Positions 2,815 through 50,495 are shown, numbered from the stretch's first letter. The stretch is DNA of 64,000 nucleotides from Leucoraja ocellata (GCA_036785375.1 JAWMAR010001270.1:1-64000); one strand, 5' to 3'. Program-made: numbers and translations. The notes: a model not told the origin generated them from the letters alone.

Positions 2815-2869
2815 ATGTCGTTTGGAGCATCAGTTCGATACATGACTCTTCTGGCTACAGTTTGGCACG
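2815..2869 (+). CDS. Gene A exon 1: signal peptide (MSFGASVRYMTLLATVWH) of VJ-C1 IgSF receptor
   Basis: ATG at 2815, 18 codons +1 nt, donor G|GTACGT (phase 1). A homologous 55-nt exon precedes each of the four V exons. Confidence 0.8.
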
Positions 2870-3271
2870 GTACGTTTAGATACATGTGGGGTTTCCGAAT
2901 CCCATGTCATGTTTTATAATATTCTATTTTAAAAAAAAGACACAACGTTCTGGAGTAATTCCGTGGGTCAGACAGCATCTTAGGAGAACGTGGATAGGTG
3001 ACGTTTCGGGTCGAAACTACTTCAGAATCTAAAGAAGACTCCTGGCCGCTGAGTTATTCCAGCACTCGGTGTCTTTTTTTGTAAACCAGCCGGTGCATTT
3101 CTTGTATCTCCTTAGAATATTCTATGTTGGTTACCAAGCACGAATTTAGTTACAGTGCTTCTTAATTCGTTTATGTCCGATTCTAGTTTATTTTGAATTT
3201 TTCAACTCTTTGTTCATTTTGCTTGTCCGGATGGCCAGCTGTTTTCAGTATTCTTGTTTTATTTCTGGCAG

Positions 3272-3577
3272 CCTTCGAAGTAACTTCAACCAAAGTGGAC
3301 CAATTCCCTAAAGACCTGACCGTCCACAGAGGAGGCAATGCGTCCATGTTCTGCACATTCTCAATACAACAAGTTACTCCTGATGTTTACTGGTGGAGAT
3401 GGGGCGAGAAGACATTTATAGAACCAGACAGCAGAAAACAATTTTCTATCAGAAAGGGCAGTGCGGATTTCATTCTCCTGAATACGAAAATCGCGGACTC
3501 CGGAGTTTATTATTGTAAATTGAAACAACAGCAGCAATCTATCGGAGATGGACCTGGCTCAAGGCTCACCGTGTTCG
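3272..3577 (+). CDS. Gene A exon 2: Ig V-set domain with germline-joined J-like G strand (NKp30/antigen-receptor-like)
   Basis: Acceptor ttctggcag|, donor G|GTAAGT, phase 1/1, 306 nt. Motifs MFC, VYWW, DSGVYYC and GDGPGSRLTV. Confidence 0.92.
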
Positions 3578-5079
3578 GTAAGTGCCCTGTAAGGGAGACA
3601 TTTTAAGCTTCCCGGGGTACAAGTAAAGCTCGCTGATATGAATAACATGACATTTTATAACTCGGCAAAAACTCGATAAGATTTATACTATAAAAACAAA
3701 CCGTTCCAAATCTGATATATTTAAATAATCCGTAAGTGGGTCAGCATCTGTGTAGAGCGAAAATGTCCTTTTCCTCATATCGTACTTCTCCAGACATTTT
3801 CCATTGCTCTCCTGTAGATTCGCGCTGTGCACTTTGGCGTTATTGCCCACGATTCAGATTCTCCGAAATCTGTAATCATTTAATCACTTAAAGTCTGGAA
3901 ACACGAAAATAAATCGATCTCTCGAGATTGGGATGTTAGAATATTCATTTAGATTAGGTATCGTGGGGTATGTGACAACAGGGTTTGTGACACAGAGACC
4001 TGACGCACAAACCACCCACGATTGAATTGAACAACGGAGCGGCCTCGGCCTTCATATTCTACTCTTATTCGTCGGCTGTAAACGAAGCTGAACCCCGGAT
4101 CAAACCACCGTGTTTATTATACAGATGAATCCTATAAACCGTTGAGAGGTTTGATTTGCTCGATTCTTACTCCAGGGACAGAATATCACCGTTTCACTCC
4201 GAGGATTCTCATTAAACCCTTAACCTTTATAAAATACGAGTAAGATTTAACGGCATTGGGGCAAACGCCTGAGCTCCCGTCCTTACAATTACATTCTTAC
4301 ATGACTCAACCACGTTTCCCACAAGAATCAGTCTCTCCACGTTATTCATTCTATCTAAATAGATCTGTGTTCGTGCCACAGATTAATTTTACGTTTTAGC
4401 TGATGATGCACTCGCCGAGGCTGAGAATAAGCATCGAGGTCTCCTCCGAGTTCAATAAAGAAACCGATCCAACAACCTGTTACTAAAGAAACGGAATGTA
4501 AAAATATTTAAAACTTATTAAACTCGTAGTCATCAACTCGTACAGCGATTTAACAAGAGGCCTCCTACTAACTACCTACTGATTTTAGATCCGACGGAGG
4601 TAGATCATCGTTCGCAAATTACCCACTCTGTGCTGATATAAGTGAAATCTTATTCAGACCAAACGTCTTCAACAAACCGAGTACATTTGGAAAATGGCAA
4701 AATTGTAGAAGAGACGTAGTCTAATTTGGATTTCCCATTCGCGTATTGTACTTATTGAAGAAGTGTCTAATATTTGCACGGCGATACTAATTATCAATAA
4801 ATAGACACAAAAAGCTGGAGTAACTTAACGGGACAGGCAGCATCACTGGAGAGAAGGAATGGGTCGAGATCCTTCTCCAGACATCTGCATTTCCTTCTTA
4901 ATAATTATTAGTATAACTCTATCATGCTCAAATTGTTCAGTTAGCGTTGTGGAGAAACGTCCCGGGCCAAAAGCTGTATCACTTGAGCCCTCCATCCCAG
5001 GTATTAAACAATTGTGTGGCCCAAGCTTTCATCTATGCAACTACGGCCTTCCTCTTGATTATTGATATTGGTGACATCT

Positions 5080-5395
5080 GGATATATACAGCGCTACATT
5101 GGTTAGCGCTGCCCACAATTTCAGCGACCCACCTTCAACCCAGATCCTGCGTGCGTCCATATATAGTTGTCCCCTTCAACGCGTAGACGTTCCTCCGGTG
5201 CTCCGGTTTATTCCGCGTGCCACAGATCTGCAGGTTGGTAGGAAAACTAGTCTCTGTAAATTGTCCCGGTTGATTGGTCGTGGTGAGGAGTGAAGAGGAA
5301 AGTTGACAGCAGATGAAAAATGAATAAGTAGAGATGGAGGTTTAATAACGCAATCTGCGCTGCTCTGTGCTGTGCTGTGCTGTGTATCTCTGTGA
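5080..5395 (+). mobile_element. Degenerate tRNA-derived SINE (HE1/V-SINE-like); copy at ~45370-45695
   Basis: Similar to the reverse complement of the SINEs at 21065 and 23035 (ccggtgctccggtt..., aaattgtccc, gctgtgtatctct tail). Confidence 0.55.
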
Positions 5396-5764
5396 TATTC
5401 CACTCTACACGTATCATTCTTTACACCAAAATCTCATAGAAACAGTCATTTTTGAACTGAACATAAAATTTTGTTGCCAGCGATGATACACCCCCCTCCA
5501 CGCTACTGATTTGGCACTTCAGAACATTGGCGATGTTTCAGAAGTCCACATATTACCTACATCCAAACCTCGGATTCCTTATGTATTGCTTGGATATATT
5601 TCACTGTCAAATCTAAAACAATGACAAATCAGTGGGTGCAAAAGCGATTGTACCGATAACCGATCTGATGGTGGGAGTGCAAGGTCGCGGTGTGACGAGG
5701 CAAACTAGAATGTTATCGTTGAATTGGAAAGAAAATATGCAACATATGTTTTCTTCTGTTACAG

Positions 5765-6055
5765 CTCCGCCAACTCCCCTGAGCATTAGCCAAGTTAATG
5801 GCAGTTCGCCGCCCAGACTTGTGTGTAAAACGGCTGCCTTTTCCCCGAAGGAAGTGAAAATATCCTGGCAAAGAAATGGTGTAACAATTTCCACCGGAGA
5901 AGAACGTGTGAACACCAGTAGCGTGGAGGAGTTGTATGTGGCTTCCAGCTTTCTCCAAGTAACGAAGCCTACCTGGCGCGTTGATATTTACACCTGCCTA
6001 GTGTCACATGTCTCCCTTGCGGTCCCGGCCAGAGTCGACTACACCGTCAAGCCAG
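5765..6055 (+). CDS. Gene A exon 3: Ig C1-set domain
   Basis: Acceptor tctgttacag|, donor G|GTAAG, phase 1/1. C1 hallmarks LVCKTAAFSP, ISW, YVASSFLQV and YTCLVSHVSL. Confidence 0.92.
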
Positions 6056-6329
6056 GTAAGACTGGCAAACAGAACTGGGAACAGAGGGAGACCTCCGATC
6101 CGATTTAGAAATATTGTTGGATACAGCTCAAACACGACTAGACGGGCTGAATGTGGACCGTGTTTATTCACCGCGGGAGTTCGGGCAAACTGACGTATCA
6201 TATGCTCTCATCTGTTTTCTAAATTATATCTGCATCTTCAATATTTATAGTGTCTGTGACGTGGCTAAACCTTCAAGGCTGTCAGAGGTGTTAGCAAACA
6301 AAAAATAATCAAAAAGACACAATCAGTGA

Positions 6330-8236
6330 GATGGGGATAGAGGTACACGTTCTTTATATATAGTCGGGAAATTACTTTGCAATGCTGAGATATTTCCCTA
6401 TTTTGAGGGTATGAGAGAAGGTCTAGCTCAACTTGATTGGGGCAGGTTATTTGAGGGGGAAGGAACATCGGCCAAGTGGGATGTTTTAAACGTATGCTGT
6501 AGAGAGCTCCGGGTGTGTACGTCTCCGTTAGAGTGAAAGGCAAAGCAGGCAAACGTGAAGAAGCTTGGCTGACGAGGGAAATTGAGACGTTAGTCAAAAA
6601 CAAGAAGGATGCATGGGACAGGTAAAGGCAGTTGGGATAAGTGCATCACTGGAGGAGTTTTGGGAAATAAGGAGCAAACTAAAAAAGGAGATCAGAAGGG
6701 CAAAAATTGGCCAGGAGATAGCTCTGGCGGGTACCATAAAAGACAATCCGAAAAGATTTTGTAAAAACATAAGGGGGGAAAGGATAACCAGAGAGAAAGT
6801 GGGACCTCTCAGGAATAAAAGCGGTCACCTCTGTGTGGAGCCACAGGAGATGGGTAAGGTCCTCAAAGAGTATTTCTCCTCTGCATTTACCAAGGAGAAA
6901 ACAGTAGGATGGAGGAAATTGGAGCAGTTACTGGAAGTGTCATGAGAGCATCGAGGAAGTACTGTCGAGGAAGTACTAAAGGTACTGTCTTGTTTGAAGG
7001 TAGTCAAATCTCTGGGGCCTGGTCGGATATATCAGAGGAAACAAGGGAGGAAATTGCGGAGGCCCTGGATTAAATGTATGTCGTCCTTAAATACAGGAGA
7101 GGTGCCAGAGGATTGGTGGGTGGCAAATGTTGTGCCTCTTTTCAAGAAGGACTGCAGGGAAAATGCTGGGAACTATAGGCTGGAGAGCTTAACATTTGTA
7201 GTTGATAAGTTACTGTGGAGTATTCTGAGGGATAGGTTATACATGCATTTGGATGGGCATGGGCTGATTAGGGACAGTCAGCATGGTTTTGTACGTGGGA
7301 CGTCGTGTCTCACAATCTGATTGATTGTTTTTGAAAACGTGGGCAAAAAGGTTGATGATGGCAGAGGGGTAGATGTTGTGTGCATGGATTTTAATAAGGC
7401 ATTCGACAAGGTGCCGCATGGTTGGCTGTTTTGGAAGGTTAGATCTCGTGGGATCTAAGGAGAGATAGCTGAATGGATAGTAAATTAGCTCCATGGAAGA
7501 AAATAGAATGTTAGTGGAAGATTGCTTCTCAGAATGGAGGCCAGTGACTAGTGGTGTGCCACAGGGTTCGGTGCTGGGCCCGTTACTGTTTGGCATCTAC
7601 ATCAATGATTTGGATGAAAACAAACAGGGCAAGATTAGCAAGATTGCTGATGATACAAAAGTTAGTGGTTTTGCAGATAGTGAAGATGGTTATGAACGAT
7701 TGCAGCAGGAACTGGATCGCTTGGCCACGTGGGCAGAGGAATGGTTGATGGAATTTAATACAGAGAAGTTTAAGGTGTTGCATTTTGGGAAGTCGAACAA
7801 GGGCAGGACCTAAACAGTAAATGCTAGTGGTGTAGAGCAGAGGGGTCTAGGAGTACAAGTGCATGGTTCCTTGAAGGTCGAATCGCAGGTGGTCAAAACG
7901 GCTTTTGGCACTTTGGCCTTCATCATTCAGAGTATTGAGTATAGATGTTGGTAGGTCATGTTGCAGTGGTATAAGACGTTGGTGAGACCACATTTAGAAT
8001 ATAGTGTTCAGTTCTGGGCACCATGTTATAGGAAAGATATTGTCAATCTTGAAATGGTTCAGAAAAGATTTACGATGATGTTGCCAGGTCTAGAGAGTGT
8101 GTGAGCTATAGGGAGACGTTAAGTAGGCTGGGTCTCTATTCCATGGAGCGTTGGAGGATGAGGGGAGATCTTATAGAAGTGTACACAATTATGAGGGGAA
8201 TAGATCGGGTAGATGCACAGATTCTACCCAGAGTAG
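6330..8236 (+). mobile_element. CR1 LINE ORF2 remnant, truncated at the duplication junction
   Basis: [14 protein letters not shown]...IADDTK, multiple stops. The paralogous copy at 46630-48860 retains its 3' end. Confidence 0.9.
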
Positions 8237-8250
8237 AATCTGTGCATCTA

Positions 8251-8720
8251 CCGCGGGTCAAAGGAGTTGGAGGAATTGAGTGAAATCCAGGTTAGCCGGG
8301 AAGTGGTGTTGGGTAAATTGAATGGATTAAAGGCCGATAAATCCCCAGGGCCAGATAGGCTGCATCCCAGAATACTTAAGGAAGTAGCTCCAGAAATAGT
8401 GGATGCATTAGTAATAATCTTTCAAAACTCTTTAGATTCTGGAGTAGTTCCTGAAGATTGGCGGGTAGCAAACGTAACCCCACTTTTTAAGAAGGGAGGG
8501 AGAGAGAAAATGGGGAATTACAGACCAGTTAGTCTAACATCGGTAGTGGGGAAACTGCTAGAGTCAGTTATTAAAGATGGGATAGCAGCACATTTGGAAA
8601 GTGGTGAAATCATTGGACAAAGTCAGCATGGATTTACGAAAGGTAAATCATGTCTGACGAATCTTATAGAATTTTTCGAGGATGTAACTAGTAGCGTGGA
8701 TAGGGGAGAACCAGTGGATA
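8251..8720 (+). mobile_element. Internal CR1 fragment nearly identical to ~11393-11862, lacking a 3' end
   Basis: ORF 8267-8791 matches ORF 11229-12245 almost residue for residue up to GEPVD. Confidence 0.88.
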
Positions 8721-8955: not shown

Positions 8956-9054
8956 ACTCTAATCTCGCACTGATTCTCGGATGTGTAGTGGGCGTATTGG
9001 CAATTTTAATCCCGATTATAATTTTGATAGTACTCAGAATAAAGGCAACAAATG
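8956..9054 (+). CDS. Gene A exon 4: uncharged transmembrane exon (DSNLALILGCVVGVLAILIPIIILIVLRIKATN)
   Basis: Acceptor ttctcctgcag|, donor G|GTAAGA, phase 1/1, 99 nt. About 23 hydrophobic residues followed by basic residues. Homologous to the TM exons of genes B and C. Confidence 0.85.
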
Positions 9055-9676: not shown

Positions 9677-9720
9677 ATGTTAATAAAAATTCGATGGAAT
9701 CAAGTCGAAGTGCAGAAACG
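9677..9720 (+). CDS. Gene A exon 5: short cytoplasmic exon (DVNKNSMESSRSAET)
   Basis: Strong acceptor ttgttttctttag|, donor |GTAGGG. Phase 1 to 0, which fits the last exon exactly. Confidence 0.7.
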
Positions 9721-11215: not shown

Positions 11216-11257
11216 GATCCTCAGCTAAATGTCAGGTAACCAGTTCACAATTACGTA

Positions 11258-17931: not shown

Positions 17932-18057
17932 ACTAAAGGAAGCGAAGCTGACAAGCCTACTTACGCTGCTCTGCAGTTTTCCAAATCAATTAAATCGGCA
18001 CCTAAACCCAAGAACGAACACCCAGTCTACGCAGATATAAATATTTCAAAGGGGTAA
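17932..18057 (+). CDS. Gene A exon 6: terminal cytoplasmic exon with two ITIM-like motifs (TKGSEADKPTYAALQFSKSIKSAPKPKNEHPVYADINISKG*)
   Basis: TACTAAC branch point at 17900-17906, acceptor ctttcacag|, phase 0, TAA at 18055-18057. Motifs TYAAL and VYADI. Joined model is 921 nt, 306 aa. Confidence 0.78.
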   Translation, partial: TKGSEADKPTYAALQFSKSIKSAPKPKNEHPVYADINISKG

Positions 18058-32908: not shown

Positions 32909-33221
32909 NNNNNNNNNNNNNNNNNNNNNNNNNNNNNNNNNNNNNNNNNNNNNNNNNNNNNNNNNNNNNNNNNNNNNNNNNNNNNNNNNNNNNNNNNNNN
33001 NNNNNNNNNNNNNNNNNNNNNNNNNNNNNNNNNNNNNNNNNNNNNNNNNNNNNNNNNNNNNNNNNNNNNNNNNNNNNNNNNNNNNNNNNNNNNNNNNNNN
33101 NNNNNNNNNNNNNNNNNNNNNNNNNNNNNNNNNNNNNNNNNNNNNNNNNNNNNNNNNNNNNNNNNNNNNNNNNNNNNNNNNNNNNNNNNNNNNNNNNNNN
33201 NNNNNNNNNNNNNNNNNNNNN
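32909..33221. other. Assembly gap (313 N)
   Basis: Run of n characters. Confidence 1.
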
Positions 33222-38460: not shown

Positions 38461-38467
38461 CCAATTT

Positions 38468-41032
38468 CAGATTCAGATTCAGATTCAATTTTAATTGTCA
38501 TTGTCAGTGTACAGTACAGAGACAACGAAATGCATTTAGCATCTCCCTTGAAGAGCGACATAGCAAACGATTTGAATAAAAAAATAATAAGTGTCCGGGG
38601 GGGGGGGGGGGGGGGGGTGATTGGCAGTCACCGAGGTACGTTGTTGAGTGGAGTGACAGCCGCCGGAAAGAAGCTGTTCCTCGACCTGCTGGTTCGGCAA
38701 CGGAGAGACCTGTAGCGCCTCCCGGATGGTAGGAGGGTAAACAGTCCATGGTTGGGGTGAGAGCAGTCCTTGGCGATGCTGAGCGCCCTCCGCAGACAGC
38801 GCTTGCATTGGACAGACTCAATGGAGGGGAGCGTGGAACCGGTGATGCGTTGGGCAATTTTCACCACCCTCTGCAATGCCTTCCGGTCGGAGACAGAGCA
38901 GTTGCCATACCATACTGTGATGCAGTTGGTAAGGATGCTCTCGATGGTGCAGCGGTAGATGTTCACCAGGATCTGAGGAGACAGGTGGACCTTCTTCAGT
39001 CTCCTCAGGAAGAAGAGACGCTGATGAGCCTTCTTGATCAGAGTAGAGGTATTGTGGGTCCAAGAGAGGTCATTGGAGATGTTGACTCCCAGGAACCTGA
39101 AGCTAGAAACACGTTCCACCTCCGTCCCGTTAATGTGGATGGGGGTGTGCGTGCCGCCTCTGGACTTCCTGAAGTCTACAATGAGCTCCTTGGTCTTCTT
39201 GGAGTTAAGGGCCAGGTTGTTGTCAGCGCACCATGCTGCTAAGTGCTGGACCTCCTCCTGTAGGCCAGCTCATCGTTGTTGCTGATGAGGCCAATCACCG
39301 TTGTATCATCTGCATACTTGATGATGGTGTTAGTACCATGTACAGGTGTGCAGTCATAGGTGAAGAGGGAGTAGAGGAGGGGGCTCAGCACACAGCCCTG
39401 AGGAACGCCGGTGTTCAGGGTGAGGGTTGAAGAGGTGTGCTTGTCTAACCTCACAGACTGGGGTCTGTTGGTTAGAAAGTCCAGTGTCCAGTTGCAGAGG
39501 GAGGGGTCGATGCCCAGGTTACCGAGTTTGGTGATCAGTTTTGATGGAATAATGGTGTTGAATGCTGAGCTGTAATCGATGAACAGCATTCTTACATAAG
39601 TGTCTCTGTTGTCGAGGTGGGAGAGGGCGGAGTTAAGTGCCGTTGAGATGGCATCCTCCGTACTCCTGTTCTTGCGGTAGGCAAACCGATAGGGATCCAG
39701 TGTGGGGGGTAGGCAGCTTTTTGAGGTGTGCCAGGACCAGCCTCTCGAAGCACTTGGTGATGATGGGGGTAAGTGCAACTGGGCGGAAGTCGTTGAGGCT
39801 TGCCGCAGTGGAGTGTTTTGGCACTGGCACGATGGAGGTGGCTTTAAGGCAAGTGGGGACAACTGCTTGGGCAAGTGACAGGTTGAAGATGTCAGTCCAG
39901 ACGTCTGTCAGCTGCGCAGCACAGGCCCTGAGCACGCGCCCGGGGATGCCGTCAGGGCCAGCAGCCTTTACGTGCATTAGTCCTACTCAGTGCCACATAC
40001 ACGTCGTAGGGGGTGAGTGTGAGGGGTTGGTGATCGGCAGGTAGAACAGCCTTGATGGCTGTCTCTAGATTGTCCCTGTTGAAGCGGCCATAGAAGTGAT
40101 TAAGCTCCTCAAGGAAGGAGGCGTCGCTGGATGTGGGGGTGATGTTGGAGGGTCTGTAGTCCGTGATGGCCTGGATGCCTTGCCACATGCGTCGGGGGTC
40201 GGAGTTGTTGTTGAAGTGCTCCTCAATCCTGAGCTCATGGCAGTGCTTGGCCTTCCTGATGCCCCTCTTCAGGTTAGCCCTGGATGAACTGTAGGCTCGA
40301 GCATCGCCTGACCTGAAAGCGGTGTCCCGTGCTTTCAGCAGTAGCCTGACCTCGCTGTTCATCCATGGCTTCTGATTCGGGTATATTTGAGGGAGGTGAC
40401 ACTATTGATGGTGCAGTTTATAAAGTCCAGAACAGAGGATGTGTAGGAATCCATGTCCGTGTGAGAGTCAAGGGTGGCCTGGGCTGCAAACGCCTTCCAG
40501 TCAGTGTTTCCAAAACACTGCTGAAGTGTGAAGTCCGCTTCCTCTGACCAGACTTTAACTGTCCTTACAGTTGGTTTAACCCGTCTGATGAGTGGGAAGT
40601 ACTTAGGGAGCAGGAACAATGAGACGTGATCAGACTGACCAAGGTGGGGGAGAAAAGATGGCGTTGTAAGCTTCAACCATGTTGGTGTAGACTTTGTCCA
40701 GTGTCTTGTCTACTCTAGTGGGGAAGGATACATGTTGGTGGAATTTGGGGAGTACAGTCTTCAGTTTGGAGTGATTGAAGTCACCCGCAACAATGAAGGC
40801 TGCCTCGGGGTTGTGCCTCTGTTTTTTGCTAATGGCAATATGCAGCTCTTTCATTGCAAGCTTGGCATTAGCATCAGGAGGGATATAGGCTGCAGTCACA
40901 ACAGTGGAGGTGAACTCTCTGGGCAGATAGAACGGTCTGCATCTAACCAAGAGGAACTCAAGGTTAGCTGAGCAGTGACTCTCGATGATGGTGGAGTCCG
41001 TGCACCATGCTTTGTTTACATAAATGCACAGA

Positions 41033-41063
<31 letters not shown>

Positions 41064-41401
41064 TGGTCTTACCAGAGTCTGATGTCCTGTCCGCTCGGAG
41101 TAAATGACGCCCCGATAACTGGATGGCGCTGTCAGTGTTGAGCCAAGTTTCAGTGAAGATCAAGATGTTGCAGTCCTTGATCCGGTTGTGGGAGGTGATC
41201 CTTAGCCGGAGTTCATCCATTTTGTTTGCCAGTGAGCGCACGTTGGCGAGGAAAAGGCTAGGAATCGCTGCCCTGTGTGGGGCTAGCTCTAACCTGGCCT
41301 TTAACCCATCTCTGCGTCCCCGGCGGTGTTTTCGTACCCGTCGCCGTCTGTTGGTGCTTCTGGTGGGCCGAGCAGGCTTGGTGCGCGCTGGTGTTCTGCC
41401 G
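38468..41401 (-). mobile_element. Rex1/Babar-clade LINE (APE endonuclease + RT, frameshifted), nested in CR1, apparent TSD CAATTT
   Basis: ORFs with [39 protein letters not shown] and YADD. (GAATCT)n 3' tail. CAATTT at 38462-38467 and 41402-41407. Absent from the paralogous site at ~1430. Confidence 0.88.
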
Positions 41402-42776
41402 CAATTTACCTTCGTACCTCATCTTTTCTCCCCGTATTGCCATTTGTTGCTCTTTAAACGTTTCCCAATCTTCTGGCTTCCTGTTCATCTATGCTATTTT
41501 ATATGTCTTCTCTTTTTATTTTTATATTGTCCCTGACTTCCCTTGTCAGCCACGGTCGCCGCTTACTCCCCTTGGAATCTGTCTTGCTCTTTGGAATGAA
41601 CTGATCCTGCACCTTCAGTATTATTCCAAGAAATACCTGCCATAGTTGAATCCATTGCCATCCCTGCTAGGGTATCTTTCCAGTCAACTTTGGCCAGCTC
41701 TTCCCTCATCGTTTCATAGTCCCCTTTGTTCAACTGTAATACTGACACCTCCGATTTATCCTTCTCCCTCTCAAATTGTAGATTAAAATTTATCAGATTA
41801 TGGTCACCACCTCCTAATGGCTCCTTGACATCGAGTTCCCTTTATCAAATGCGGTTTATTACACAACACTAAATCCAAAATTGCCTTCTCCCTGGTAGGT
41901 TCCAGTACAAGCTGCTCTAAGAATCCATCTCGGAGGCACTCCACAAACTCACTTTCTTGGGGTCCAGTACCAGCAACTGCAGCTCCTTCACACACATTGT
42001 ATCGTATCGTAGTACCTGAAATTTGAAAATATAATGTTCAAACCATTAGTTTGTAAGCTACTCAAGTGAAATGTAAAGTGCTGGTCTTCCAGTTTGTGTG
42101 TTGGTCTCACTCTGGCAGTGGGGGACGGAAAGGACGGAAAGGTCGGTATGGGAAGGAAAAGGTACGTTCAATTGGTTAGCAACCCAGAGCTCCAGCTGGC
42201 CTTCGCGAACAGGGCAAGGTTCGCGATCTAAAATATCGTCTGTCCATTCCTTCCGCCGATGCTGCCTGACCCGCTGAGTTCCTCCAGCATTCTGTTCTTT
42301 GCTGAAGGAACACAGCAGATTAGAGGTATCCATTTGCTCTATAGGTGCTGGATAGCTTGTTGGGTCCGTCGAGCAGTACAAAAATAATTTACGTGGAACG
42401 AGAAAACTAGTAAAATACACTGAAGAACAGAATTTTGTTTGTGGTAGAAAAGTACTGGAATAATACAACGGTGATATGGACGTTTCGGGTCCCTTCATTC
42501 AGTCCCAACACCTGCAGTTCCTCGTGTCTCCATTTTGTTTGTGTAATTCAATTAGTGATAGCTTCTGCTCTCGGGATTCTTTAGTGCTCCCGGGAGGTCT
42601 CGGAGAAAATTCTACATCAAGCATAAATGTTTCACCTGGGAGATGAGATGGGATGCCTTAAAATAAAACGAAATATGAAACCCACTGCACTGTCACATGA
42701 TATCCGGCGTCATGAAATACACGAATCTTTGAAGAGGCTTCCTCATTTGCAGCAAGCGACCGCCTCATTTTGCAAA

Positions 42777-42831
42777 ATGTCGTTTGGAGCATCAGTTCGA
42801 TACATGACTCTTCTGGCTACAGTTTGGCACG
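42777..42831 (+). CDS. Gene C exon 1: signal peptide (identical to gene A leader)
   Basis: 55 nt, donor G|GTACGT. Confidence 0.8.
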
Positions 42832-43224
42832 GTACGTTTACATACATGTGGGGTTTACGAATCTCATGTCATATTTTATATTATTCTATTTTTAAAAAAG
42901 ACATGTAGTTCTAGAGTAATTCCGTGGGTCAGGCAGCATCTAAGGAGAACGTGGATAGGTGACGTTTCGGGTCGAAACTACTTCAGAATCTAAAGAAGAC
43001 TCTTGGCCGCTGAGTTACTCCAGCACTCGGTATCTTTTTTTGTTAACCAATTCCTTGTATCTCCTTAGAATATTCTATGTTGGTTACCAAGCACGAATTT
43101 AGTTACAATGCTTCTTAATTCGTTTATGCCCGATTCTAGTTTATTTTGAATTTTTCAACTCTTTGCTCATTTTGCTTGTCCGGGTGGCCAACTGTTTTCA
43201 GTATTCTTGTTTTATTTCTGGCAG

Positions 43225-43530
43225 CGTTCGAAGTAACTTCAACCAAAGTGGACCAATTCCCTAAAGACCTGACCGTCCACAGAGGAGGCAATGCGTCCAT
43301 GTTCTGCACATTCTCAATACAACAAGTTACTCCTGATGTTTACTGGTGGAGATGGGGCGAGAAGACATTTATAGAACCAGACAGCAGAAAACAATTTTCT
43401 ATCAGAAAGGGCAGTGGGGATTTCATTCTCCTGAATACGAAAATCGCGGACTCCGGAGTTTATTATTGTAAAGTGAAACAACAGCAGCAATCTATCGGAG
43501 ATGGACCTGGCTCAAGGCTCACCGTGTTCG
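43225..43530 (+). CDS. Gene C exon 2: VJ-type Ig V domain (2 aa differences from gene A)
   Basis: AG/GT boundaries, phase 1/1, 306 nt. DSGVYYCKVKQQQQSIGDGPGSRLTV. Confidence 0.92.
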
Positions 43531-46063
43531 GTAAGTGCCCTGTAAGGGAGACATTTTAAGCTTCCTGGGGTACAAGTAAAGCTCGCTGATATGAATAACA
43601 TGACATTTTATAACGGCAAAAACTCGATAAGATTTATACCATAAAAACAAACCGTTCCAAATCTGATATATTTAAATAATCCGTAAGTGGGTCAGCATCT
43701 GTGTAGAGATAAAATGTCCTTTTCCTCATTTCGTACTTCTCCAGAGATTTTCCATTGCTCTCCTGCAGATTCGCGCTGTCCACTTTGGCGTTATTGCCCA
43801 CGATTCAGATTCACCCTTTACTACCCTCCATGGTGTGCTTGAATGTATTTACATCAAATGACTTAGATTAAAAGGTTGTTTAGAATTGTTTTTCATGGAC
43901 AAGGTTGAAGCCACGTGGATGTTTTAATCTCAGTTGTGATAGGAATGTCCCATTTCTGCTCCCGAAGACAACGGAATAATGTTAACACCTCCATCCTGGA
44001 TAGGTTCTTTAAAACAATATTCAAACGCCACCACTCTACGCCAATAGTGGTTACAATCTCATAAGAATAGTGTTTACAGTCCATATTGATTCACACATAA
44101 TTTTCGCTTTTTACGCGCCACCTTACAAATTATCTCCGAAATCTGTAATCATTTAATCACTTAAAGTCTGGAAACAAGAAAATAAATCGATCTCTCGAGA
44201 TTGGGATGTTAGAATATTAATTTTGATTAGGTATCGTGTGGTATGTGACAACAGGGTTTGTGACACAGAGACCTGACACAAAAACCATCCACGATTGAAT
44301 TGAACAACGGAGCGGCCTCGGCCTTAAATATTCTACTCTCATTCGTCGCCTGTAAACGAAGCTGAACCCCGGATCAAACCACCATGGTTATTATACAGAT
44401 GAATCCTATAAACCGTTGAGAGGTTTGATTTGCTCGATTCTTACTCCAGGGACAGAATATCACCGTCTCACTCCGAGGATTCTCATTAAACCCTTAACCT
44501 TTATAAAATACGAGTTAGATTAAACGGCATTGGGGCAAACGCCTGAGCTCCCGTCCTTACAATTACATTCTTACATGACTCAACCACGTTTCCCACAAGA
44601 ATCAGTCTCTCCACGTTTCCCCCCAATTATTCATTCTATCTAAATAGATCTGTGTTCGTGCCACAGATTAATTTTACGTTTTAGCTGATGATGCACTCGC
44701 CGAGGCTGAGAATAAACATTGAGGTATCCCCCGAGTTCAATAAAGAAACCGATTCAACAACCTGTTACTAAAGAAACGGAATGTAAAAATATTTAAAACT
44801 TATGAAACTCGTAGTCATCAACTCGTAGAGCGATTTAACAACCTACTAACTACCTACTGATTGTAGATCCGACGGAGGTAGATCATCGTTCGCAAATGAC
44901 CCACTCTGCTGATATAAGTGAAATCTTATTCAGACCAAACGTCTTCAACAAACCGAGTACATTTGGAAAATGGCAAAATTGTAGAAGAGACGTAGTCTAA
45001 TTTGGATTTCCCATTCGCGTATTGTACTTATTGAAGACGTGTCTAATATTTGCACGGCGATACTAATTATCAGTAAATAGATACAAAAAGCTGGAGTAAC
45101 TTAACGGGACAGGCAGCATCTGTGGAGAGAAGGAATGGGTGACGTTTCGGGTCGAGATCCTTCTCCAGACATCTGCATTTCCTTCTTAATAACTATTAGT
45201 ATAACTCTATCATGATCAAATTGCTCAGTTAGCGTTGTGGAGAAACGTCCCGGGCCAAAAGCTGTATCACTCGAGCCCTCCATCCCAGGTATTAAACAAT
45301 TGTGTGGCCCAAGCCTTCATCTATGCAACTACGGCCTGCCTATTGATTATTGATATTAGTGACATCTGGATATATACAGCGCTACATTGGTTAGCGCTGC
45401 CCACAATTTCAGCGACCCAAGTTCGACCCAGATCCTGCGTGCGTCCATATATAGTTCTCCCCTTCAACGCGTAGACATTCCACCGGTGCTCCGGTTTATT
45501 CCGCATGCCACAGATATGCAGGTTGGTAGGAAAACTAGCCTCTGTAAATTGTCCCGGTTGATTGGCCGTGGTGAGGAGTGAAGAGGAAAGTTGACAGGAG
45601 ATGAAAAATGAATACGTGGAGATGGAGGTTTAATGACGCAATAGGTAATCTGGGCTGCTCTGTGCTGTGCTGTGCTGTGCTGTGTATCTCTGTGATATTC
45701 CACTCTACACGTATCATTCTTTACACCAAAATCTCGTAAAAACAGTCATTTTTGAACTGAACATAAAAGGTTGTTGCCATCGATGATACACCCCCGCCAC
45801 GCTACTGATTTGGCACTTCAGAACATTGGCGATTTTTCAGAAGCCCACATATTACCTACATCCAAACCTCGGATTCCTTATGTATTGCTTGGATATATTT
45901 CACTGTCAAATCTAAAACAATAACAAATCAGTGATTGCAAAAGCGATTGTACCGATAACCGATCTGATGGTGGGAGTGCAAGGTCGCGGTGTGACGAGGC
46001 AAACTAGAATGTGATCGTTGAATTGGAAAGAAAATATGCAACATATTTTTTCTTCTGTTACAG

Positions 46064-46354
46064 CTCCGCCAACTCCCCTGAGCATTAGCCAAGTTAATGG
46101 CAGTTCGCCGCCCAGACTTGTGTGTAAAACGGCTGCCTTTTCCCCGAAGGAAGTGAAAATATCCTGGCAAAGAAATGGTGTAACAATTTCCACCGGGGAA
46201 GAACGTGTGAACATCAGTAGCGTGGGGGGGTTGCATGTGGCTTCCAGCTTTCTCCAAGTAACGAAGCCTACCTGGCGCGTTGATATTTACACCTGCCTAG
46301 TGTCACATGTCTCCCTTGAGGTCCCGGCCAAAGTCGACTACACCGTCAAGCCAG
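46064..46354 (+). CDS. Gene C exon 3: Ig C1-set domain (6 aa differences from gene A)
   Basis: Acceptor tctgttacag|, donor G|GTAAGA, 291 nt, C1 motifs intact. Confidence 0.92.
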
Positions 46355-46629
46355 GTAAGACTGGCAAACAGAGCTGGGAACAGAGGGAGACCTCCGATCC
46401 GATTTAGAAATATTGATGGATACAGCTCAAACACGACTAGACGGGCTGAATGTGGACCGTGTTTATTCGCCGCGGGAGTTCGGGCAAACTGACGTATCAT
46501 ATGCTCTCATATGTTTTCTAAATTATATCTGCATCTTCAATATTTATAGTGTCTGTGACGTGGCTAAACCTTCAAGGCTGTCAGAGGTGTTAGCAAACAA
46601 AAAATAATCAAAAAGACACAATCAGTGAG

Positions 46630-48860
46630 ATGGGGATAGAGGTACACGTTCTTTATATATAGTCGGGAAATTACTTTGCAATGTTGAGATATTTCACTAT
46701 TTTGAGGGTATGAGAGAAGGTCTAGCTCAACTTGACTGGGGCAGGTTATTTGATGGGGAGGGAACATCGGCCAAGTGGGATGTTTTAAACGTATGCTGTA
46801 GAGAGCTCAGGGTGTGTACGTCTCCGTTAGAGTGAAAGGCAAAGCAGGCAAACGTAAAGAAGCTTGGCTGACGAGGGAAATTGAGACGTTAGTCAAAAAC
46901 AAGAAGGATGCATGGGACAGGTAAAGGCAGTTGGGATAAGTGCATCACTGGAGGAGTTTTGGGAAATAAGGAGCAAACTAAAAAAGGAGATCAGAAGGGT
47001 AAAAATTGTCCAGGAGATAGCTCTGGCGGGTACCATAAAAGACAATCCGAAAAGATTTTGTAAAAACATAAGGGGGGAAAGGATAACCAGAGAGAAAGTG
47101 GGACCTCTCAGGAATAAAAGCGGTCACCTCTGTGTGGAGCCACAGGAGATGGGTAAGGTCCTCAAAGAGTATTTCTCCTCTGCATTTACCAAGGAGAAAA
47201 CAGTAGGATGGAGGAAATTGGAGCAGTTACTGGAAGTGTCATGAGAGCATCGAGGAAGTACTGTCGAGGAAGTACTAAAGGTACTGTCGTGTTTGAAGGT
47301 AGTCAAATCTCTGGGGCCTGGTCGGATATATCAGAGCGCATTGCGGGACACAAGGGAGGAAATTGCGGAGACCCTGGATTAAATGTATGTCGTCCTTAAA
47401 TACAGGAGAGGTGCCAGAGGATTGGTGGGTGGCAAATGTTGTGCCTCTTTTCAAGAAGGACTGCAGGGAAAATGCTGGGAACTATAGGCTGGAGAGCTTA
47501 ACATTTGTCGTTGATAAGTTACTGTAGAGTATTCTGAGGGATAGGTTATACATGCATTTGGACGGGCATGGGCTGATTAGGGACAGTCAGCATGGTTTTG
47601 TACGTGGGACGTCGTGTCTCACAATCTGATTGATTGTTTTTGAAAACGTGGGCAAAAAGGTTGATGAGGGCAGAGCTGTAGATATTGTGTGCATGGATTT
47701 TAATAAGGCATTCGACAAGGTGCCGCATGGTTGGCTGTTTTGGAAGGTTAGATCTCGTGGGATCTAAGGAGAGATAGCTGAATGGATAGTAAATTAGCTC
47801 CATGGAAGAAAATAGAATGTTAGTGGAAGATTGCTTCTCAGAATGGAGGCCAGTGACTAGTGGTGTGCCACAGGGTTCGGTGCTGGGCCCGTTACTGTTT
47901 GGCATCTACATCAATGATTTGGATGAAAACAAACAGGGCAAGATTAGCAAGATTGCTGATGATACAAAAGTTAGTGGTTTTGCAGATAGTGAAGATGGTT
48001 GTGAACGATTGCAGCAGGAACTGGATCGCTTGGCCACGTGGGCAGAGGAATGGTTGATGGAATTTAATACAGAGAAGTTTAAGGTGTTGCATTTTGGGAA
48101 GTCGAACAAGGGCAGGACCTAAACAGTAAATGCTAGAGGTGTAGAGCAGAGGGGTCTAGGAGTACAAGTACATGGTTCCTTGAAGGTCGAATCGCAGGTG
48201 GTCAAAACGGCTTTTGGCACTTTGGCCTTCATCATTCAGAGTATTGAGTATAGACGTTGGTAGGTCATGTTGCAGTGGTATAAGACGTTGGTGAGACCAC
48301 ATTTGGAATATAGTGTTCAGTTCTGGGCACCATGTTATAGGAAAGATATTGTCAATCTTGAAATGGTTCAGAAAAGATTTACGATGATGTTGCCAGGTCT
48401 AGAGCGTGTGTGAGCTATAGGGAGACGTTAAGTAGGCTGGGTCTCTATTCCATGGAGCGTTGGAGGATGAGGGGAGATCTTATAGAAGTGTACACAATTA
48501 TGAGGGGAATAGATCGGGTAGATGCACAGATTCTACCCAGAGTAGGGGAATCGTGGACCAGAGGACATAGGTTCAAGGTGAAGGGGAAAAGATTTAATAG
48601 GAATCCGAGGGGTAACATTTTCACACAGAGGGTGGAGGGTGTAAGTAACAAGCTGCCAGAGGAGGTGGTTGAGGCTGGGACTATCCCATCGTTTAAGAAA
48701 CAGTTGGACAGGTACATGGATAGGAAATGTTTGGAGGGTTATGGACCAAGCACAGGCAAATGGGACTAGGGTAGCAGGGACATTGTTGGCCGGTGTACGC
48801 GAGTTGGGCCGAAGGGCATGTTTCCACACTGTATCATTCTGTGACTGTATGACTCTTCTC
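46630..48860 (+). mobile_element. CR1 LINE ORF2 remnant with intact 3' end
   Basis: RT motifs and ...GYGPSTGKWD* followed by the 3' UTR. Confidence 0.9.
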
Positions 48861-49266
48861 AGAGATTAGTGAATCTTTGTAATTCCCTACCTCGAAGCGT
48901 TGCAGATGTTTGAAAAGTGAGGATTGACTTTTATAGATTTCTGGACAGGTTGGATCACCAACAAGGACAAGGGCAGCAGGTGCATGTGAACACCACGGCC
49001 TGCAGGCTGCCTTCCAAATTGCACACTAGCTTGACTTGGAAATGTATCACTCGTTGACATATAATGCAATAACAATATTGTTCATATTGGAAGCAAGATC
49101 TCCCGTTTATTTTGTAGTGTCCATTTGCCTAATATTTCTATTTTATTTGGATATTTTTTGTAGTACAGTGACACTTGATAAAGCTCTTTACACAAATACA
49201 ATTCTATAGTTTGTTCATTCACTTGTGATAATTGTCTTATTGCTCAATTACTTTTTACGTCTGCAG

Positions 49267-49371
49267 GTTCGGCCAGCGTTGTCCTTGTCCTTCGCAATGT
49301 AGGAGGTACATTGATCATTCTACTGGTGTTGGCTACCTTGAGAATTGTTTTTGGATCAAACTCTGCCAAAG
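49267..49371 (+). CDS. Gene C exon 4: Arg-containing transmembrane exon (GSASVVLVLRNVGGTLIILLVLATLRIVFGSNSAK)
   Basis: Acceptor ttttacgtctgcag|, donor G|GTGAAT, phase 1/1. Arg near the N-terminus of the hydrophobic stretch, aligned with the xVGG motif of the paralogous TM exons. Confidence 0.8.
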
Positions 49372-50308
49372 GTGAATGAAGCTTCATTCTAGAGTTAATC
49401 TTCAAATTCCCTGTAAAATGGTGCTGCGGAGAATCAAATGACGCTACGTGAATTGATGCTATTTGGCCACATTGTCAATAACAAGACCGTGATCCCCAAA
49501 CGGTACAGAATTATATCAGTTCTCCATCCCCAGACTCACAGAGGACAACAATTCCGTCAAGTCTCCGCTATCACCAGTGTTCCAAATTCACTTGTAAAAA
49601 TCCAAAATCAAAAGAGGGCATTGAAAGAGCTTAGAAAAATAAATTGTTAATCATCGTTAATATCAAGGAATACAATGACCGTCTTCTAATCGAACTGTTA
49701 TAAAATAATTGTTCCAATGATGAAACGCCACATGCAGAATTGGAAGATGAGAGCGGTTGTAATTTAGATGTCGCCACTTGGAGCGGTTTCCTTCCTCAAG
49801 TTACAGCTTTGTGCAATTGTTTATCTTGGGCCAATGCATGTTGGATAAATTGATTATTTCCCAAACCTTTGATTTAAAAGTTGTCGGCACGATTGCCGTT
49901 CTTTCTTTCATTTCTGTGGTCAGTCGGGACTCCGCTGAATGTTGTGATTTCTGCATCTGCCCGAATTGGTCCCCATCCCATTGTTTTTGCTTCTGAAGGA
50001 TGGAGCCCAGCCGCGGCTGATCCCTGTCCGATGAAGCGTTGGGAATGTCTTCAAAACTGATGTTCAGATAATTATTCAAAGTATCATTTAGTGGTGACTC
50101 TCTCGCCTTGACTTCGAACCCATCTGGAGACAAAGGCGACAAATCGATTTTAGTCGGGAGCACAAATTGGGCAACAGGGAATCGGCGCCCGTTAGATGTC
50201 TTGTCGGCTCATAATAAGAGTGGTGTAAGAAAATATGTCAACATTCAAAATAACTCACGATCGTCAAATCTCCCCTATAGTACCCAATTGATTTGTCTTC
50301 CTGTCTAG

Positions 50309-50404
50309 GCTCCGTGGTAAAGGTTGACCGATTGGTCGAGACATCAGAGCAAACAATGAACAGAGAGGAACATGGAAAGACCTCCGGGTATGTGATAGAA
50401 ACGG
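50309..50404 (+). CDS. Gene C exon 5: cytoplasmic exon without ITIM (GSVVKVDRLVETSEQTMNREEHGKTSGYVIET)
   Basis: Acceptor gtcttcctgtctag|, donor G|GTAAGA, phase 1/1. An alternative donor after 50387 is possible. Confidence 0.55.
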
Positions 50405-50475
50405 GTAAGAACGCTAGGGGACTTATCACAATAATTCAGTTGATATAAACTTTAAATGTTTTGTTTCTTTAACAG

Positions 50476-50495
50476 ATCGTGCTAGAAACGGCTGA
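50476..50495 (+). CDS. Gene C terminal coding exon (DRARNG*)
   Basis: Strong acceptor ttgtttctttaacag|, TGA at 50493-50495. Confidence 0.55.

What the first reader, a model, noticed from the sequence alone, without database searches (positions are those of the whole stretch)
2815..50495. Genes A and C: almost identical ectodomains wired to opposite signalling modules
Seen in sequence: the leaders are identical, V differs at 2 aa (A/G, L/V) and C1 at 6 aa. A continues into the neutral TM LALILGCVVGVLAILIPIIILIVL and a tail with TYAAL and VYADI. C continues into VVLVLRNVGGTLIILLVLATL and a tail with no YxxL/I. Established knowledge: this is the signature of paired receptors (KIR2DL/2DS, Ly49I/H, SIRPa/b, PILRa/b). 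An N-terminal TM Arg recruits FcRgamma/CD3zeta, as in NKp30 and NKp46. Inference: same or near-same ligand, opposite output, possibly a counter to pathogen decoys.
Basis: partly seen in the sequence, partly recalled or inferred. Interest (0 to 1): 0.85.

Follow-up and report, generated by a model that had tools for sequence, protein, structure and literature searches.

The report
Young shark-lineage paired immune receptor genes
Two neighbouring immune-receptor genes of a cartilaginous fish share an almost identical outer part through a recent 7-kb copy, one ending in a tyrosine-motif tail and the other in an arginine-bearing membrane anchor, the classic look of an inhibitory/activating receptor pair, but no transcript of either was seen.

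Summary
Leaders are identical (55/55 nt), the V exons differ at 2 aa and the C1 exons at 6 aa. Every proposed exon has canonical splice sites and a compatible phase. The similarity comes from a 7.35-kb block copied at 2.45% substitution divergence. Exons are not significantly better kept than introns (p 0.14), and dN/dS is not below 1. So the near-identity reflects youth, not demonstrated selection for a shared ligand.

LINE colinearity shows that C holds the ancestral arrangement. A is a chimera of a C-type outer part on B-like membrane and tail exons.

Both genes belong to an unnamed VJ-C1-TM receptor family found across cartilaginous fishes. NCBI labels its members inconsistently, as SIRPalpha-like, NCR3LG1-like and others. 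The family has both neutral-TM/ITIM and Arg-TM/short-tail members.

Weak points:
- No reads on the exons in four RNA runs.
- Both of A's tyrosine motifs have Pro at Y-2, outside the strict ITIM consensus.
- C has His at an invariant aromatic C1 position.
- The adaptor is unknown.

The assembly gap touches no exon. The scan noted similar VJ-C1 receptors elsewhere in this genome; those notes are unchecked.

The parts
2815..2869 (+). Gene A leader exon (55 nt, ends in phase 1)
   Evidence: ATG at 2815 and a GT donor. Identical to C's leader, 55/55 nt. Aligns to the leaders of relatives P0157 and P0030.
3272..3577 (+). Gene A germline-joined VJ-type V exon (306 nt, phase 1 to 1)
   Evidence: Pfam V-set E 4.7e-8 and I-set 6.4e-8. 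The J-like G-x-G-x-x-L-x-V end lies in the same exon. The model has pLDDT 93.4 and its best fold matches are shark VNAR.
5765..6055 (+). Gene A C1-set exon (291 nt, phase 1 to 1)
   Evidence: Pfam C1-set E 1.6e-13. The best solved relative is UrIg2, chain 9dmx_A, E 4.4e-18.
8956..9054 (+). Gene A transmembrane exon, uncharged core (Cys three residues before the G-V/G-G motif)
   Evidence: Canonical splice sites. tblastn to family TM exons gives E 1.6e-5. About 65% nt identity to both TM exon regions of gene B.
9677..9720 (+). Gene A small cytoplasmic exon (44 nt, phase 1 to 0)
   Evidence: Splice sites and phase only. No significant homology hit, so this is the least certain exon of A.
17932..18057 (+). 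Gene A last exon: ...PTYAAL...(18 aa)...PVYADI..., stop at 18055-18057
   Evidence: Aligns to the last exon of 8 relatives, best E 6.6e-8. A TACTAAC branch-point-like site precedes the acceptor. 64.8% nt identity to gene B's tail exon region.
42777..42831 (+). Gene C leader exon
   Evidence: Identical to A's leader.
43225..43530 (+). Gene C VJ-type V exon
   Evidence: 3 nt and 2 aa differences from A. Pfam V-set E 8.6e-9.
46064..46354 (+). Gene C C1-set exon
   Evidence: 7 nt and 6 aa differences from A. Pfam C1-set E 2.8e-12. It has His where 35 of 35 relatives have Tyr or Phe.
49267..49371 (+). Gene C transmembrane exon with Arg-Asn in the outer third of the helix; read-through stop at 49377-49379
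   Evidence: The Arg sits at the family's Cys position, three residues before G-G, as in gene B's second TM exon. No nucleotide similarity to the 3' regions of A or B.
50476..50495 (+). Possible last coding exon of C (6 codons plus stop), the alternative to read-through
   Evidence: Acceptor and phase fit and AATAAA lies at 50632. No other support.
888..8236 (+). A copy of the duplicated block (upstream region, leader, V, C1 and part of a LINE)
   Evidence: Both ends break LINE colinearity.
37918..48545 (+). C copy of the duplicated block. It is longer because of a minus-strand LINE at about 38464-41405 and about 0.3 kb more at 43812-44133.
   Evidence: LINEs run colinear through both of its ends.
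8209..8251 (+). Right junction of the A copy: a 16-nt perfect inverted copy (8209-8224 / 8236-8251), followed by an unrelated LINE fragment
   Evidence: The fragment 8250-8723 is 98.5% identical to 11392-11865.
32909..33221 (.). Assembly gap (313 N) between gene B and gene C; intergenic
   Evidence: No family exon lies within 2.5 kb on the left or 9.5 kb on the right.

Best explanation
A and C are two tandem members of a cluster of at least four genes (A, B, C, D). The cluster encodes non-rearranging VJ-C1-TM immune-type receptors of a cartilaginous fish.

Shown:
- A roughly 7.35-kb piece carrying the proximal upstream region, leader, V and C1 exons of a C-type gene was copied. It was joined by non-homologous, LINE-embedded junctions in front of the TM and cytoplasmic exons of a B-like gene. 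This created chimera A.
- The genome therefore encodes two receptors whose outer parts differ at 8 residues. A has an uncharged TM and a tail with two YxxL/I motifs, homologous to the family's ITIM-bearing last exon. C has Arg-Asn in the outer third of its TM helix and a 10-16 aa tail without tyrosine.

Inferred:
- On binding the same or very similar ligands, A damps the cell through SH2-phosphatase recruitment.
- C signals through an ITAM-bearing partner chain held by the membrane Arg. CD3zeta or a DAP12-like chain is more likely than FcRgamma.
- Because the proximal 1.4 kb upstream is also copied, both are probably expressed in the same cells.

The pair looks like a newborn paired receptor. 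Its near-identity reflects its age, not yet any proven selection.
For: - Exon identity and counts.
- Canonical splice sites and phases for all 11 exons.
- Domain types.
- Duplication blocks.
- Direction of copying. The LINE ORF2 stays colinear through C's right breakpoint to residue 307 of a 310-aa reference ORF, but stops matching in A at the breakpoint. C's left LINE forms a single hit across 37918. A's junction carries a 16-nt inverted filler.
- A's TM and tail regions are about 65% nt identical to gene B's. They align to family exons with E 1.6e-5 and 6.6e-8.
- Arg lies at the same TM position in C, in B's second TM exon, and in Mobula P0152/P0153 and P0133. Codons there are TGT in A, CGT in B's second TM exon and CGC in C.
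- Family census of 34 distinct TM strings, from the listing, hand-sorted. Twelve have a membrane-embedded basic residue, and 9 of those 12 have tails of 33 aa or less without an ITIM. Twenty-two are neutral, and 12 of those 22 carry ITIM tails.
- Mobula birostris has an Arg-TM model (P0165) that is 71% identical over 267 aa to an ITIM-bearing model (P0151) and 81% identical over the V region to another (P0033).
Against: - No expression seen. In four RNA runs (1.1-1.9 thousand million letters read from each), depth was 0 on the C1 exon bins and 0 on the Arg-TM exon bins; the only signal was 0.09 in one run at 46300-46499. A's C1 reads would also have been laid at the 95% threshold. Only repeats were covered. 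Tissues are unknown, and I could not confirm that the runs are from the window's species.
- Both of A's motifs have Pro at Y-2, outside the ITIM/ITSM consensus as I recall it. At the first motif, 8 of 8 aligned relatives have Leu or Val there.
- C has His where 35 of 35 relatives have Tyr or Phe in C1.
- No selection signal: exons 10/652 versus non-exon 169/6662 differences, p 0.14; Nd 8, Sd 1, p 0.69.
- C's TM exon has no nucleotide similarity to the TM exons of A or B. Hydrophobic ORF stretches alone are not rare: 18 real ones in six frames.
- Three of 12 Arg/Lys-TM relatives also carry ITIM-type tails, so TM charge and tail type are not strictly coupled in this family.
- The adaptor is unknown, and FcRgamma was reported absent from shark genomes in 2014.
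Confidence: 0.55

Rival explanations
1. The pair is an incidental by-product of turnover in a fast-evolving gene cluster. One or both genes are silent or decaying, and no paired function has been selected. A would be a dead-on-arrival fusion, and C (or A) would be drifting towards a pseudogene.
For: - Zero depth on the exons in four RNA runs.
- Exon divergence is not lower than intron divergence, and dN/dS is not below 1.
- A's first motif has Pro where relatives have Leu or Val.
- C has His at an invariant aromatic core position.
- Neighbour B's tail exon has lost the first tyrosine motif (hit at 30329-30415).
- A's junctions are non-homologous breaks inside LINEs.
Against: - All reading frames and all 11 splice sites are intact in both genes.
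- With only 10 exon differences, the selection tests have almost no power.
- Four libraries of unknown tissue, sampled at 5-25%, are a weak negative.
- Both module types are kept in many species.
Confidence: 0.28
2. Both genes are expressed, but the outputs are not 'inhibit versus activate'. A's YxxL/YxxI motifs would act as endocytosis or other SH2-docking signals. C would be a partner-less, signalling-poor or decoy receptor, as SIRPgamma is in mammals (recalled).
For: - Pro at Y-2 in both of A's motifs.
- The 18-residue spacing between the motifs fits neither an ITAM nor a proven ITIM pair.
- No adaptor is identified, and FcRgamma was not found in sharks in a 2014 survey.
- Some relatives combine an Arg TM with ITIM tails.
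Against: - A's tail is homologous to family tails that carry canonical L/V-x-Y-x-x-L plus T/A-x-Y-x-x-V motifs.
- A membrane-embedded Arg at a fixed position recurs in several species and goes with short tails in 9 of 12 cases. That is hard to explain without a partner chain.
Confidence: 0.12
3. Assembly artefact: A and C are one locus represented twice (haplotigs or a false duplication), brought together across the N gap.
For: - An assembly gap at 32909-33221 separates the contig carrying A and B from the contig carrying C and D.
Against: - The blocks differ at 2.45% of sites plus a 2.9-kb LINE and other indels.
- Sequence beyond both ends of the block is unrelated apart from repeats.
- The neighbours are not allelic: B's V and D's V are each only 55% and 83% identical to A's V.
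- A's junction has its own filler sequence.
Confidence: 0.05

Closest known systems
SIRPalpha / SIRPbeta paired receptors (the label NCBI gives many relatives: 'tyrosine-protein phosphatase non-receptor type substrate 1-like')
   Same: - An N-terminal V domain with a J-like end, followed by a C1-set domain, then a TM.
- One form has a tyrosine-motif tail and another has a basic TM residue and a short tail.
- Forms arise by recent duplication.
(SIRP features are recalled from general knowledge.)
   Different: - One C1 domain here, not two.
- Arg in the outer third of the TM, not a central Lys.
- No SIRP chain among the best 60 sequence matches for V or C1, nor in the 50 fold-match rows shown.
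- Orthology and CD47 binding were not tested.
UrIg / UrIg2, non-rearranging VJ-C1 genes of elasmobranchs (PMC12227049; sections 7 and 16 read)
   Same: - A germline-joined VJ exon with a split leader.
- C1-set domains.
- Restricted to cartilaginous fish.
- The best solved relative of the C1 exon is UrIg2, chain 9dmx_A, E 4.4e-18.
   Different: - UrIg2 has nine C domains in nurse shark. It is expressed in liver and gill, and UrIg protein lies in extracellular matrix.
- Here there is one C1 plus signalling-type TM and tails.
- The margin over IgM constant domains is small (1.3e-16).
- The V exon did not hit UrIg2 among its best 60 matches.
   Same: - A non-rearranging VJ-type V domain. NKp30 appears at ranks 34 and 36 of the fold matches.
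- An Arg near the outer end of the TM helix that pairs with CD3zeta/FcRgamma (recalled).
   Different: NKp30 has no C1 domain and no inhibitory twin. Its sequence is not among the best 60 V matches.
Teleost NITRs and mammalian KIR/Ly49/PILR/CD300 paired receptors
   Same: Multigene clusters with inhibitory and activating forms that share ectodomains, and rapid birth and death of genes. PMC2213150 and PMC3533184 were seen only in a search listing.
   Different: - Different domain make-up: no C1 domain in those families (recalled).
- By the abstract of PMC2213150, activating KIR/Ly49 arise from inhibitory ones. Here the LINE evidence says the tyrosine-tailed gene received its ectodomain from the Arg-TM gene.
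Shark IgNAR V domains (VNAR)
   Same: Best fold matches of the V model: ranks 1-8, E 2.6e-9 to 6.5e-9, TM 0.75-0.81. The V is compact, with 53 residues between the two cysteines.
   Different: VNAR is rearranged and belongs to a multi-domain secreted or B-cell receptor chain. The identity is only 17-25% in those rows.

Membership tests
Paired (inhibitory/activating) immune receptors, as a functional class | Two genes in one genome with highly similar ligand-binding ectodomains | tested here: met
   Leader 55/55 nt identical; V differs at 2/101 aa and C1 at 6/96 aa.
Paired (inhibitory/activating) immune receptors, as a functional class | One member has a cytoplasmic ITIM or ITSM. Consensus recalled: S/I/V/L-x-Y-x-x-L/V/I, or T-x-Y-x-x-V/I. 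| tested here: inconclusive
   A has YAAL and YADI, but Pro at Y-2 in both. The exon is homologous to relatives' tails with canonical motifs, E 6.6e-8, where 8 of 8 have Leu or Val at Y-2 of the first motif.
Paired (inhibitory/activating) immune receptors, as a functional class | The other member has a basic residue inside the TM helix and a short tail without signalling motifs | tested here: met
   C has Arg as the sixth residue of a 21-residue hydrophobic stretch. Its tail is 10-16 aa with no Tyr.
Paired (inhibitory/activating) immune receptors, as a functional class | The activating member associates with an ITAM-bearing adaptor through the TM charge | not testable with these tools
   No adaptor sequence was available. 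PMC4016189 reports that no FcRgamma homologue was found in shark genomes.
Paired (inhibitory/activating) immune receptors, as a functional class | Both members are expressed, ideally in the same cells | tested here: inconclusive
   Depth was 0 on the C1 and Arg-TM exon bins in 4 of 4 RNA runs laid. Tissue is unknown and only 5-25% of each run was read.
Paired (inhibitory/activating) immune receptors, as a functional class | Shared or overlapping ligand | not testable with these tools
   No ligand is known. The 8 aa differences show no selection signal.
SIRP family | Three-domain ectodomain V-C1-C1 (recalled) | tested here: not met
   Only one C1 exon lies between V and TM in A, B and C. The relatives' models are also V-C1-TM.
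SIRP family | Specific sequence or fold similarity to SIRP domains | tested here: not met
   No SIRP chain in the best 60 of 479 V matches, in the best 60 of 7303 C1 matches, or in the 50 fold rows shown. Lower ranks were not visible.
UrIg/UrIg2 | VJ exon followed by several C domains (nine in nurse shark UrIg2); no ITIM/Arg-TM dichotomy described | tested here: not met
   A single C1 exon. Architecture as described in PMC12227049, section 7.
Rearranging antigen receptors (Ig/TCR) | Separate V and J segments joined by recombination | tested here: not met
   The J-like end lies in the same exon as V and runs straight into a GT donor.
Unnamed chondrichthyan VJ-C1-TM receptor family (NCBI models labelled SHPS-1-like, NCR3LG1-like, Ig lambda-like, PD-L1-like and others) | Shared leader, V, C1, TM and tail exon types across rays, sharks and a chimaera | tested here: met
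   - Profile search: 33 proteins at E<=1e-30, and the single-domain hits are V-C1-TM models.
- C1 is 49-56% identical to ray models.
- Leader, TM and tail exons align.
- Species and names.

The most novel reading that the evidence does not exclude
This could be a snapshot of the birth of a paired receptor in the oldest living jawed-vertebrate lineage. It sits inside an undescribed family, found across cartilaginous fishes, of non-rearranging receptors built like a single antigen-receptor chain (VJ + C1 + TM).

Two features would be new:
1. The neutral/activating switch would be a one-nucleotide Cys-to-Arg toggle at a fixed TM position (TGT versus CGT/CGC).
2. Here the tyrosine-tailed, presumably inhibitory gene was made by grafting the ectodomain of the Arg-TM gene onto inhibitory exons through a LINE-embedded template-switch junction. 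That is the reverse of the inhibitory-to-activating route described for KIR and Ly49.
Probability: 0.3. Interest if true: 0.7.

Novelty: new member of a known kind. Interest (0 to 1): 0.5.

Why it matters
Paired receptors are well known in mammals and bony fish, but little is documented for cartilaginous fish. This family has the VJ-C1 layout of an antigen-receptor chain without rearrangement. It therefore bears on what the innate relatives of Ig/TCR looked like and how they signalled.

The A/C pair is young enough that its origin can still be read: the breakpoints, the direction of copying and the junction filler are all visible. It also offers a clean experiment, because the two ectodomains differ at only 8 residues while the signalling exons differ completely. 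If neither gene is expressed, the pair is simply one more by-product of cluster turnover.

Tried and rejected
- **RNA evidence.** My one read-laying run (X13, X16, X17, X20 on 45900-51899) gave no depth on any exon, only on LINE/SINE-like repeats. It tests neither splicing nor strand. I chose the C side hoping that A-derived reads would show as loose ends at the C1 donor, but none were there. That share may be only the LINE.
- **Database gene models of the window's own species.** The C1 search (proteins of 90-285 aa) found 7 proteins, the best 56% identical. So no model or cDNA fragment of A or C is in that collection within that length range. Longer A-type models (about 306 aa) were outside the range and remain untested.
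- **Selection tests.** Searches have no power, with only 10 exon differences.
- **Homology of C's last small exon to A's 44-nt exon.** I saw a 12-of-13 nt resemblance by eye, but sensitive BLAST found nothing between the two 3' regions, so I dropped the idea.
- **Upstream acceptor for the V exon.** An acceptor at 3239 would lengthen the signal peptide. I rejected it because its AG is AA in C.
- **The 'SQ' match just upstream of A's tail exon.** I take it as the translated acceptor (tcacag), not lost exon sequence. A stop lies two codons upstream and a branch-point-like site precedes it.
- **Hydrophobic stretch at 49105-49170.** I take it as a T-rich intron, not a hidden neutral TM exon. It lacks the family's G-G motif and had no hit.
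- **TM motif count.** The motif gave 4 hits against 0.02 expected, but it was written from those same four exons, so the count is circular and only illustrative.
- **Literature.** Searches found no paper describing this family in the held library. Flajnik et al. 2012 (PMC3709836) is not held. A 2021 paper on shark NCR3 family genes, which I recall, appears only as a citation. Either could name the family, and supplements were closed. For PMC2213150 and PMC3533184 I saw only the search listing with the start of the abstract.
- **Joined model.** All searches were exon by exon, and CDS lengths were summed as numbers only.

Full report
**What is there.**

The window holds one N run, 32909-33221.

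Self-comparison shows a segmental duplication, 888-8236 <-> 37918-48545. It falls into three blocks of 96.3-96.9% BLAST identity. The C copy is longer by a minus-strand LINE at about 38464-41405 (endonuclease and reverse-transcriptase ORFs) and by about 0.3 kb.

Inside the block lie three exons of each gene, compared:
- Leader exons: 55/55 nt identical.
- V exons: 3/306 nt and 2/101 aa differ.
- C1 exons: 7/291 nt and 6/96 aa differ.

Pfam calls the exons V-set (with I-set scoring equally) and C1-set.

Beyond the block the genes diverge completely.
- A goes on to an uncharged TM exon (8956-9054), a 44-nt exon (9677-9720) and a last exon (17932-18057) carrying the two tyrosine motifs.
- C goes on to a TM exon (49267-49371) with Arg-Asn. 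It then either reads through to a stop three codons later or splices to a 20-nt exon ending at 50495.

All eleven exons have AG/GT boundaries and compatible phases. Exon lengths sum to 921 nt for A and to 777 or 765 nt for C. I added these as numbers only. I built no joined sequence and searched everything exon by exon.

**The gap.**

The N run lies between gene B's last family-like exon (30329-30415) and the start of C's copy of the block (37918). Its flanks are unique non-coding sequence, and no family exon is near it. It interrupts no exon or reading frame of A or C.

What it does leave open is whether the contig with A and B and the contig with C and D are correctly ordered and oriented. 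A haplotig explanation is unlikely for three reasons. Sequence outside the block is unrelated apart from repeats. The neighbours are not allelic: the V exons of B and D are 55% and 83% identical to A's. And A's junction has its own filler sequence. I could not test this with DNA reads.

**Why the ectodomains are alike.**

Across 7,314 aligned columns the two copies differ at 179 (2.45%), plus 87 gap columns. Exons differ at 10/652 and the rest at 169/6662, Fisher p 0.14. Counting whole codons exon by exon gives 8 non-synonymous and 1 synonymous difference, dN/dS about 2.4, p 0.69.

So the near-identity is what a young duplication gives by itself. Nothing here shows selection to keep a common ligand, and nothing shows diversifying selection either.

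Comparison with 30-35 relatives shows that both copies have changed.
- A is derived at both V sites and at one C1 site.
- C carries His where 35 of 35 relatives have Tyr or Phe.

**Direction of the copy.**

At the right end of the block, C's LINE reading frame continues colinearly to residue 307 of a 310-residue reference LINE ORF in the same window. A's stops matching at the breakpoint.

In A the breakpoint is followed by a perfect 16-nt inverted copy of sequence lying 11 nt upstream (8209-8224 / 8236-8251). After that comes an internal fragment of another LINE, 98.5% identical to 11392-11865.

At the left end, C's LINE is one continuous hit across 37918. In A, two LINE pieces of different age abut. 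C, or a C-like gene, is therefore the source and A is the derived chimera. This agrees with the scan's note s1-885008.

A's TM and tail regions are about 65% identical at nucleotide level to both TM exon regions and to the tail exon region of gene B. C's 3' region matches neither.

**What family.**

A profile of the four V exons in the window found 942 proteins at E<=0.001 among 1.84 billion, and 33 at E<=1e-30. Many are giant multi-Ig proteins that score by summing domains.

The single-domain hits are models of 220-410 aa with the same leader-V-C1-TM layout. They come from rays (Mobula, Hypanus, Hemitrygon, Narcine), from sharks (Scyliorhinus, Heterodontus, Heptranchias, Carcharodon, Chiloscyllium, Mustelus) and from the chimaera Callorhinchus.

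NCBI's automatic names for them disagree with one another: SIRPalpha/SHPS-1-like, NCR3LG1-like, Ig lambda-like, PD-L1-like, class II-like, tapasin-related and 'uncharacterized'. That is the mark of a family nobody has named. The closest C1 matches are ray models at 49-56% identity, and no model of the window's own species was found in the 90-285 aa range.

Relatives align to A's leader, to A's TM exon (E 1.6e-5) and to A's last exon (E 6.6e-8).

Among solved structures:
- The C1 exon is closest to UrIg2 (E 4.4e-18), just ahead of IgM constant domains.
- The V exon is closest to I-set domains, VNAR and TCR alpha.
- A confident V model (pLDDT 93.4) best matches shark VNAR domains. NKp30 is at rank 34, and no SIRP chain appears in the 50 rows shown.

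I therefore do not file the genes under SIRP, NKp30/B7-H6 or UrIg. The SIRP and UrIg layouts were tested and not met.

**The signalling modules.**

When the TM exons are anchored on their G-G motif, the residue three places before it is as follows:
- Cys in A and in most neutral relatives.
- Tyr in B's first TM exon.
- Arg in C, in B's second TM exon, and in Mobula P0152/P0153 and P0133.

The codons are TGT, TAT, CGC and CGT, so the charged and uncharged states are one nucleotide apart.

I hand-sorted the 34 distinct TM strings of the 46 relatives that carry the C1 motif (listing).
- Twelve have a membrane-embedded basic residue. Nine of these have tails of 33 aa or less without an ITIM, and three have ITIM-type motifs.
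- Twenty-two are neutral, and 12 of these carry ITIM tails. Several of the other ten look like truncated models.

In Mobula birostris an Arg-TM model (P0165) is 71% identical over 267 aa to an ITIM-bearing model (P0151). Its V region is 81% identical to that of another ITIM-bearing model (P0033). So pairs of this sort recur in the family.

**Cautions.**
- A's two motifs both have Pro at Y-2. At the first motif, 8 of 8 aligned relatives have Leu or Val there. The ITIM/ITSM consensus I apply is recalled, not taken from a call.
- The 18-residue spacing between A's motifs does not fit an ITAM.
- C's TM exon is supported by its splice sites, its phase and the position of the Arg, not by significant sequence similarity.
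- Hydrophobic ORF stretches as such are common, with 18 real ones in the window. My motif count is circular.
- The rule that an outer-third Arg pairs with CD3zeta/FcRgamma is recalled general knowledge.
- A 2014 survey reported no FcRgamma homologue in shark genomes (PMC4016189, passages read). CD3zeta or a DAP12-like chain is therefore the safer guess.

**Expression.**

The look-up of sequencing runs offered RNA runs under the same species label. I laid four of them on 45900-51899.

Depth was 0 in every bin from 45900 to 46699 and from 48900 to 51099, with two exceptions: 0.09 in X17 at 46300-46499 and 0.09 in X13 at 50300-50499. Reads fell only on the LINE (46700-48899) and on a very abundant repeat (51100-51899), mostly at 95-99% likeness.

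Because A's C1 exon is 97.6% identical to C's, A-derived reads would also have been laid, and none were. This counts against expression in those four libraries. It is weak evidence, however. Only 5-25% of each run was read, the tissues are unknown to me, and the absence of unique coverage means I could not even confirm the species.

**Verdict.**

I put about 0.55 on a working inhibitory/activating pair and about 0.28 on an incidental, partly silent product of cluster turnover. The remainder goes to other signalling readings or to an assembly artefact.

The kind is known, and this is a new member in an apparently unnamed family of cartilaginous fishes. The most interesting parts are the still-readable origin, the direction of the graft and the one-nucleotide Cys/Arg switch.

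The scan's first readers noted similar VJ-C1 receptors and paired systems on other pieces of this genome (s1-884633, s1-884616). I did not check those.

Noticed in passing
window 8209-8251: A's right breakpoint carries a perfect 16-nt inverted copy of the sequence 11 nt upstream, and C lacks it. This looks like a snap-back or template-switch repair scar.
   Followed up: yes
window 27886-27990, 29024-29134, 30329-30415: Gene B (V 24737-25039, C1 27063-27353) has two tandem TM exons. The first has Tyr and the second Arg at the family's Cys position. Its tail exon has lost the first tyrosine motif.
   Followed up: partly
window 63306-63871: A fourth gene, D, starts at the window's end. Its leader lies at 63306-63359, and its V exon is 83% identical to A's at protein level. 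At both sites where A and C differ in V, D agrees with C.
   Followed up: partly
window 38464-41405: A minus-strand LINE (endonuclease and reverse-transcriptase ORFs) sits 1.4 kb upstream of C's start codon and is absent from the A copy. It may affect C's regulation.
   Followed up: partly
window 3272-3577: The V domain is compact, with 53 residues between the cysteines. It scores equally as V-set and I-set, and its model best matches shark VNAR domains.
   Followed up: yes
window 46233-46235 (C1 exon of C): C has His where all 35 aligned relatives have Tyr or Phe. Four of the six C1 differences between A and C cluster within 8 residues.
   Followed up: partly
window 51100-51899: A repeat here is covered at depths of hundreds to about 2,500 in all four RNA runs, on both strands, with many variant letters and back-joints. 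It appears to be a highly transcribed repeat family.
   Followed up: no
window 37077-37091: A second TYAAL string lies in a LINE on the + strand. No relative matches there, so I take it as chance.
   Followed up: yes
window 8250-8723 and 11392-11865: An internal LINE fragment just upstream of A's TM exon is 98.5% identical to part of a near-full-length LINE 3 kb downstream. This is a second very recent local copy event.
   Followed up: no
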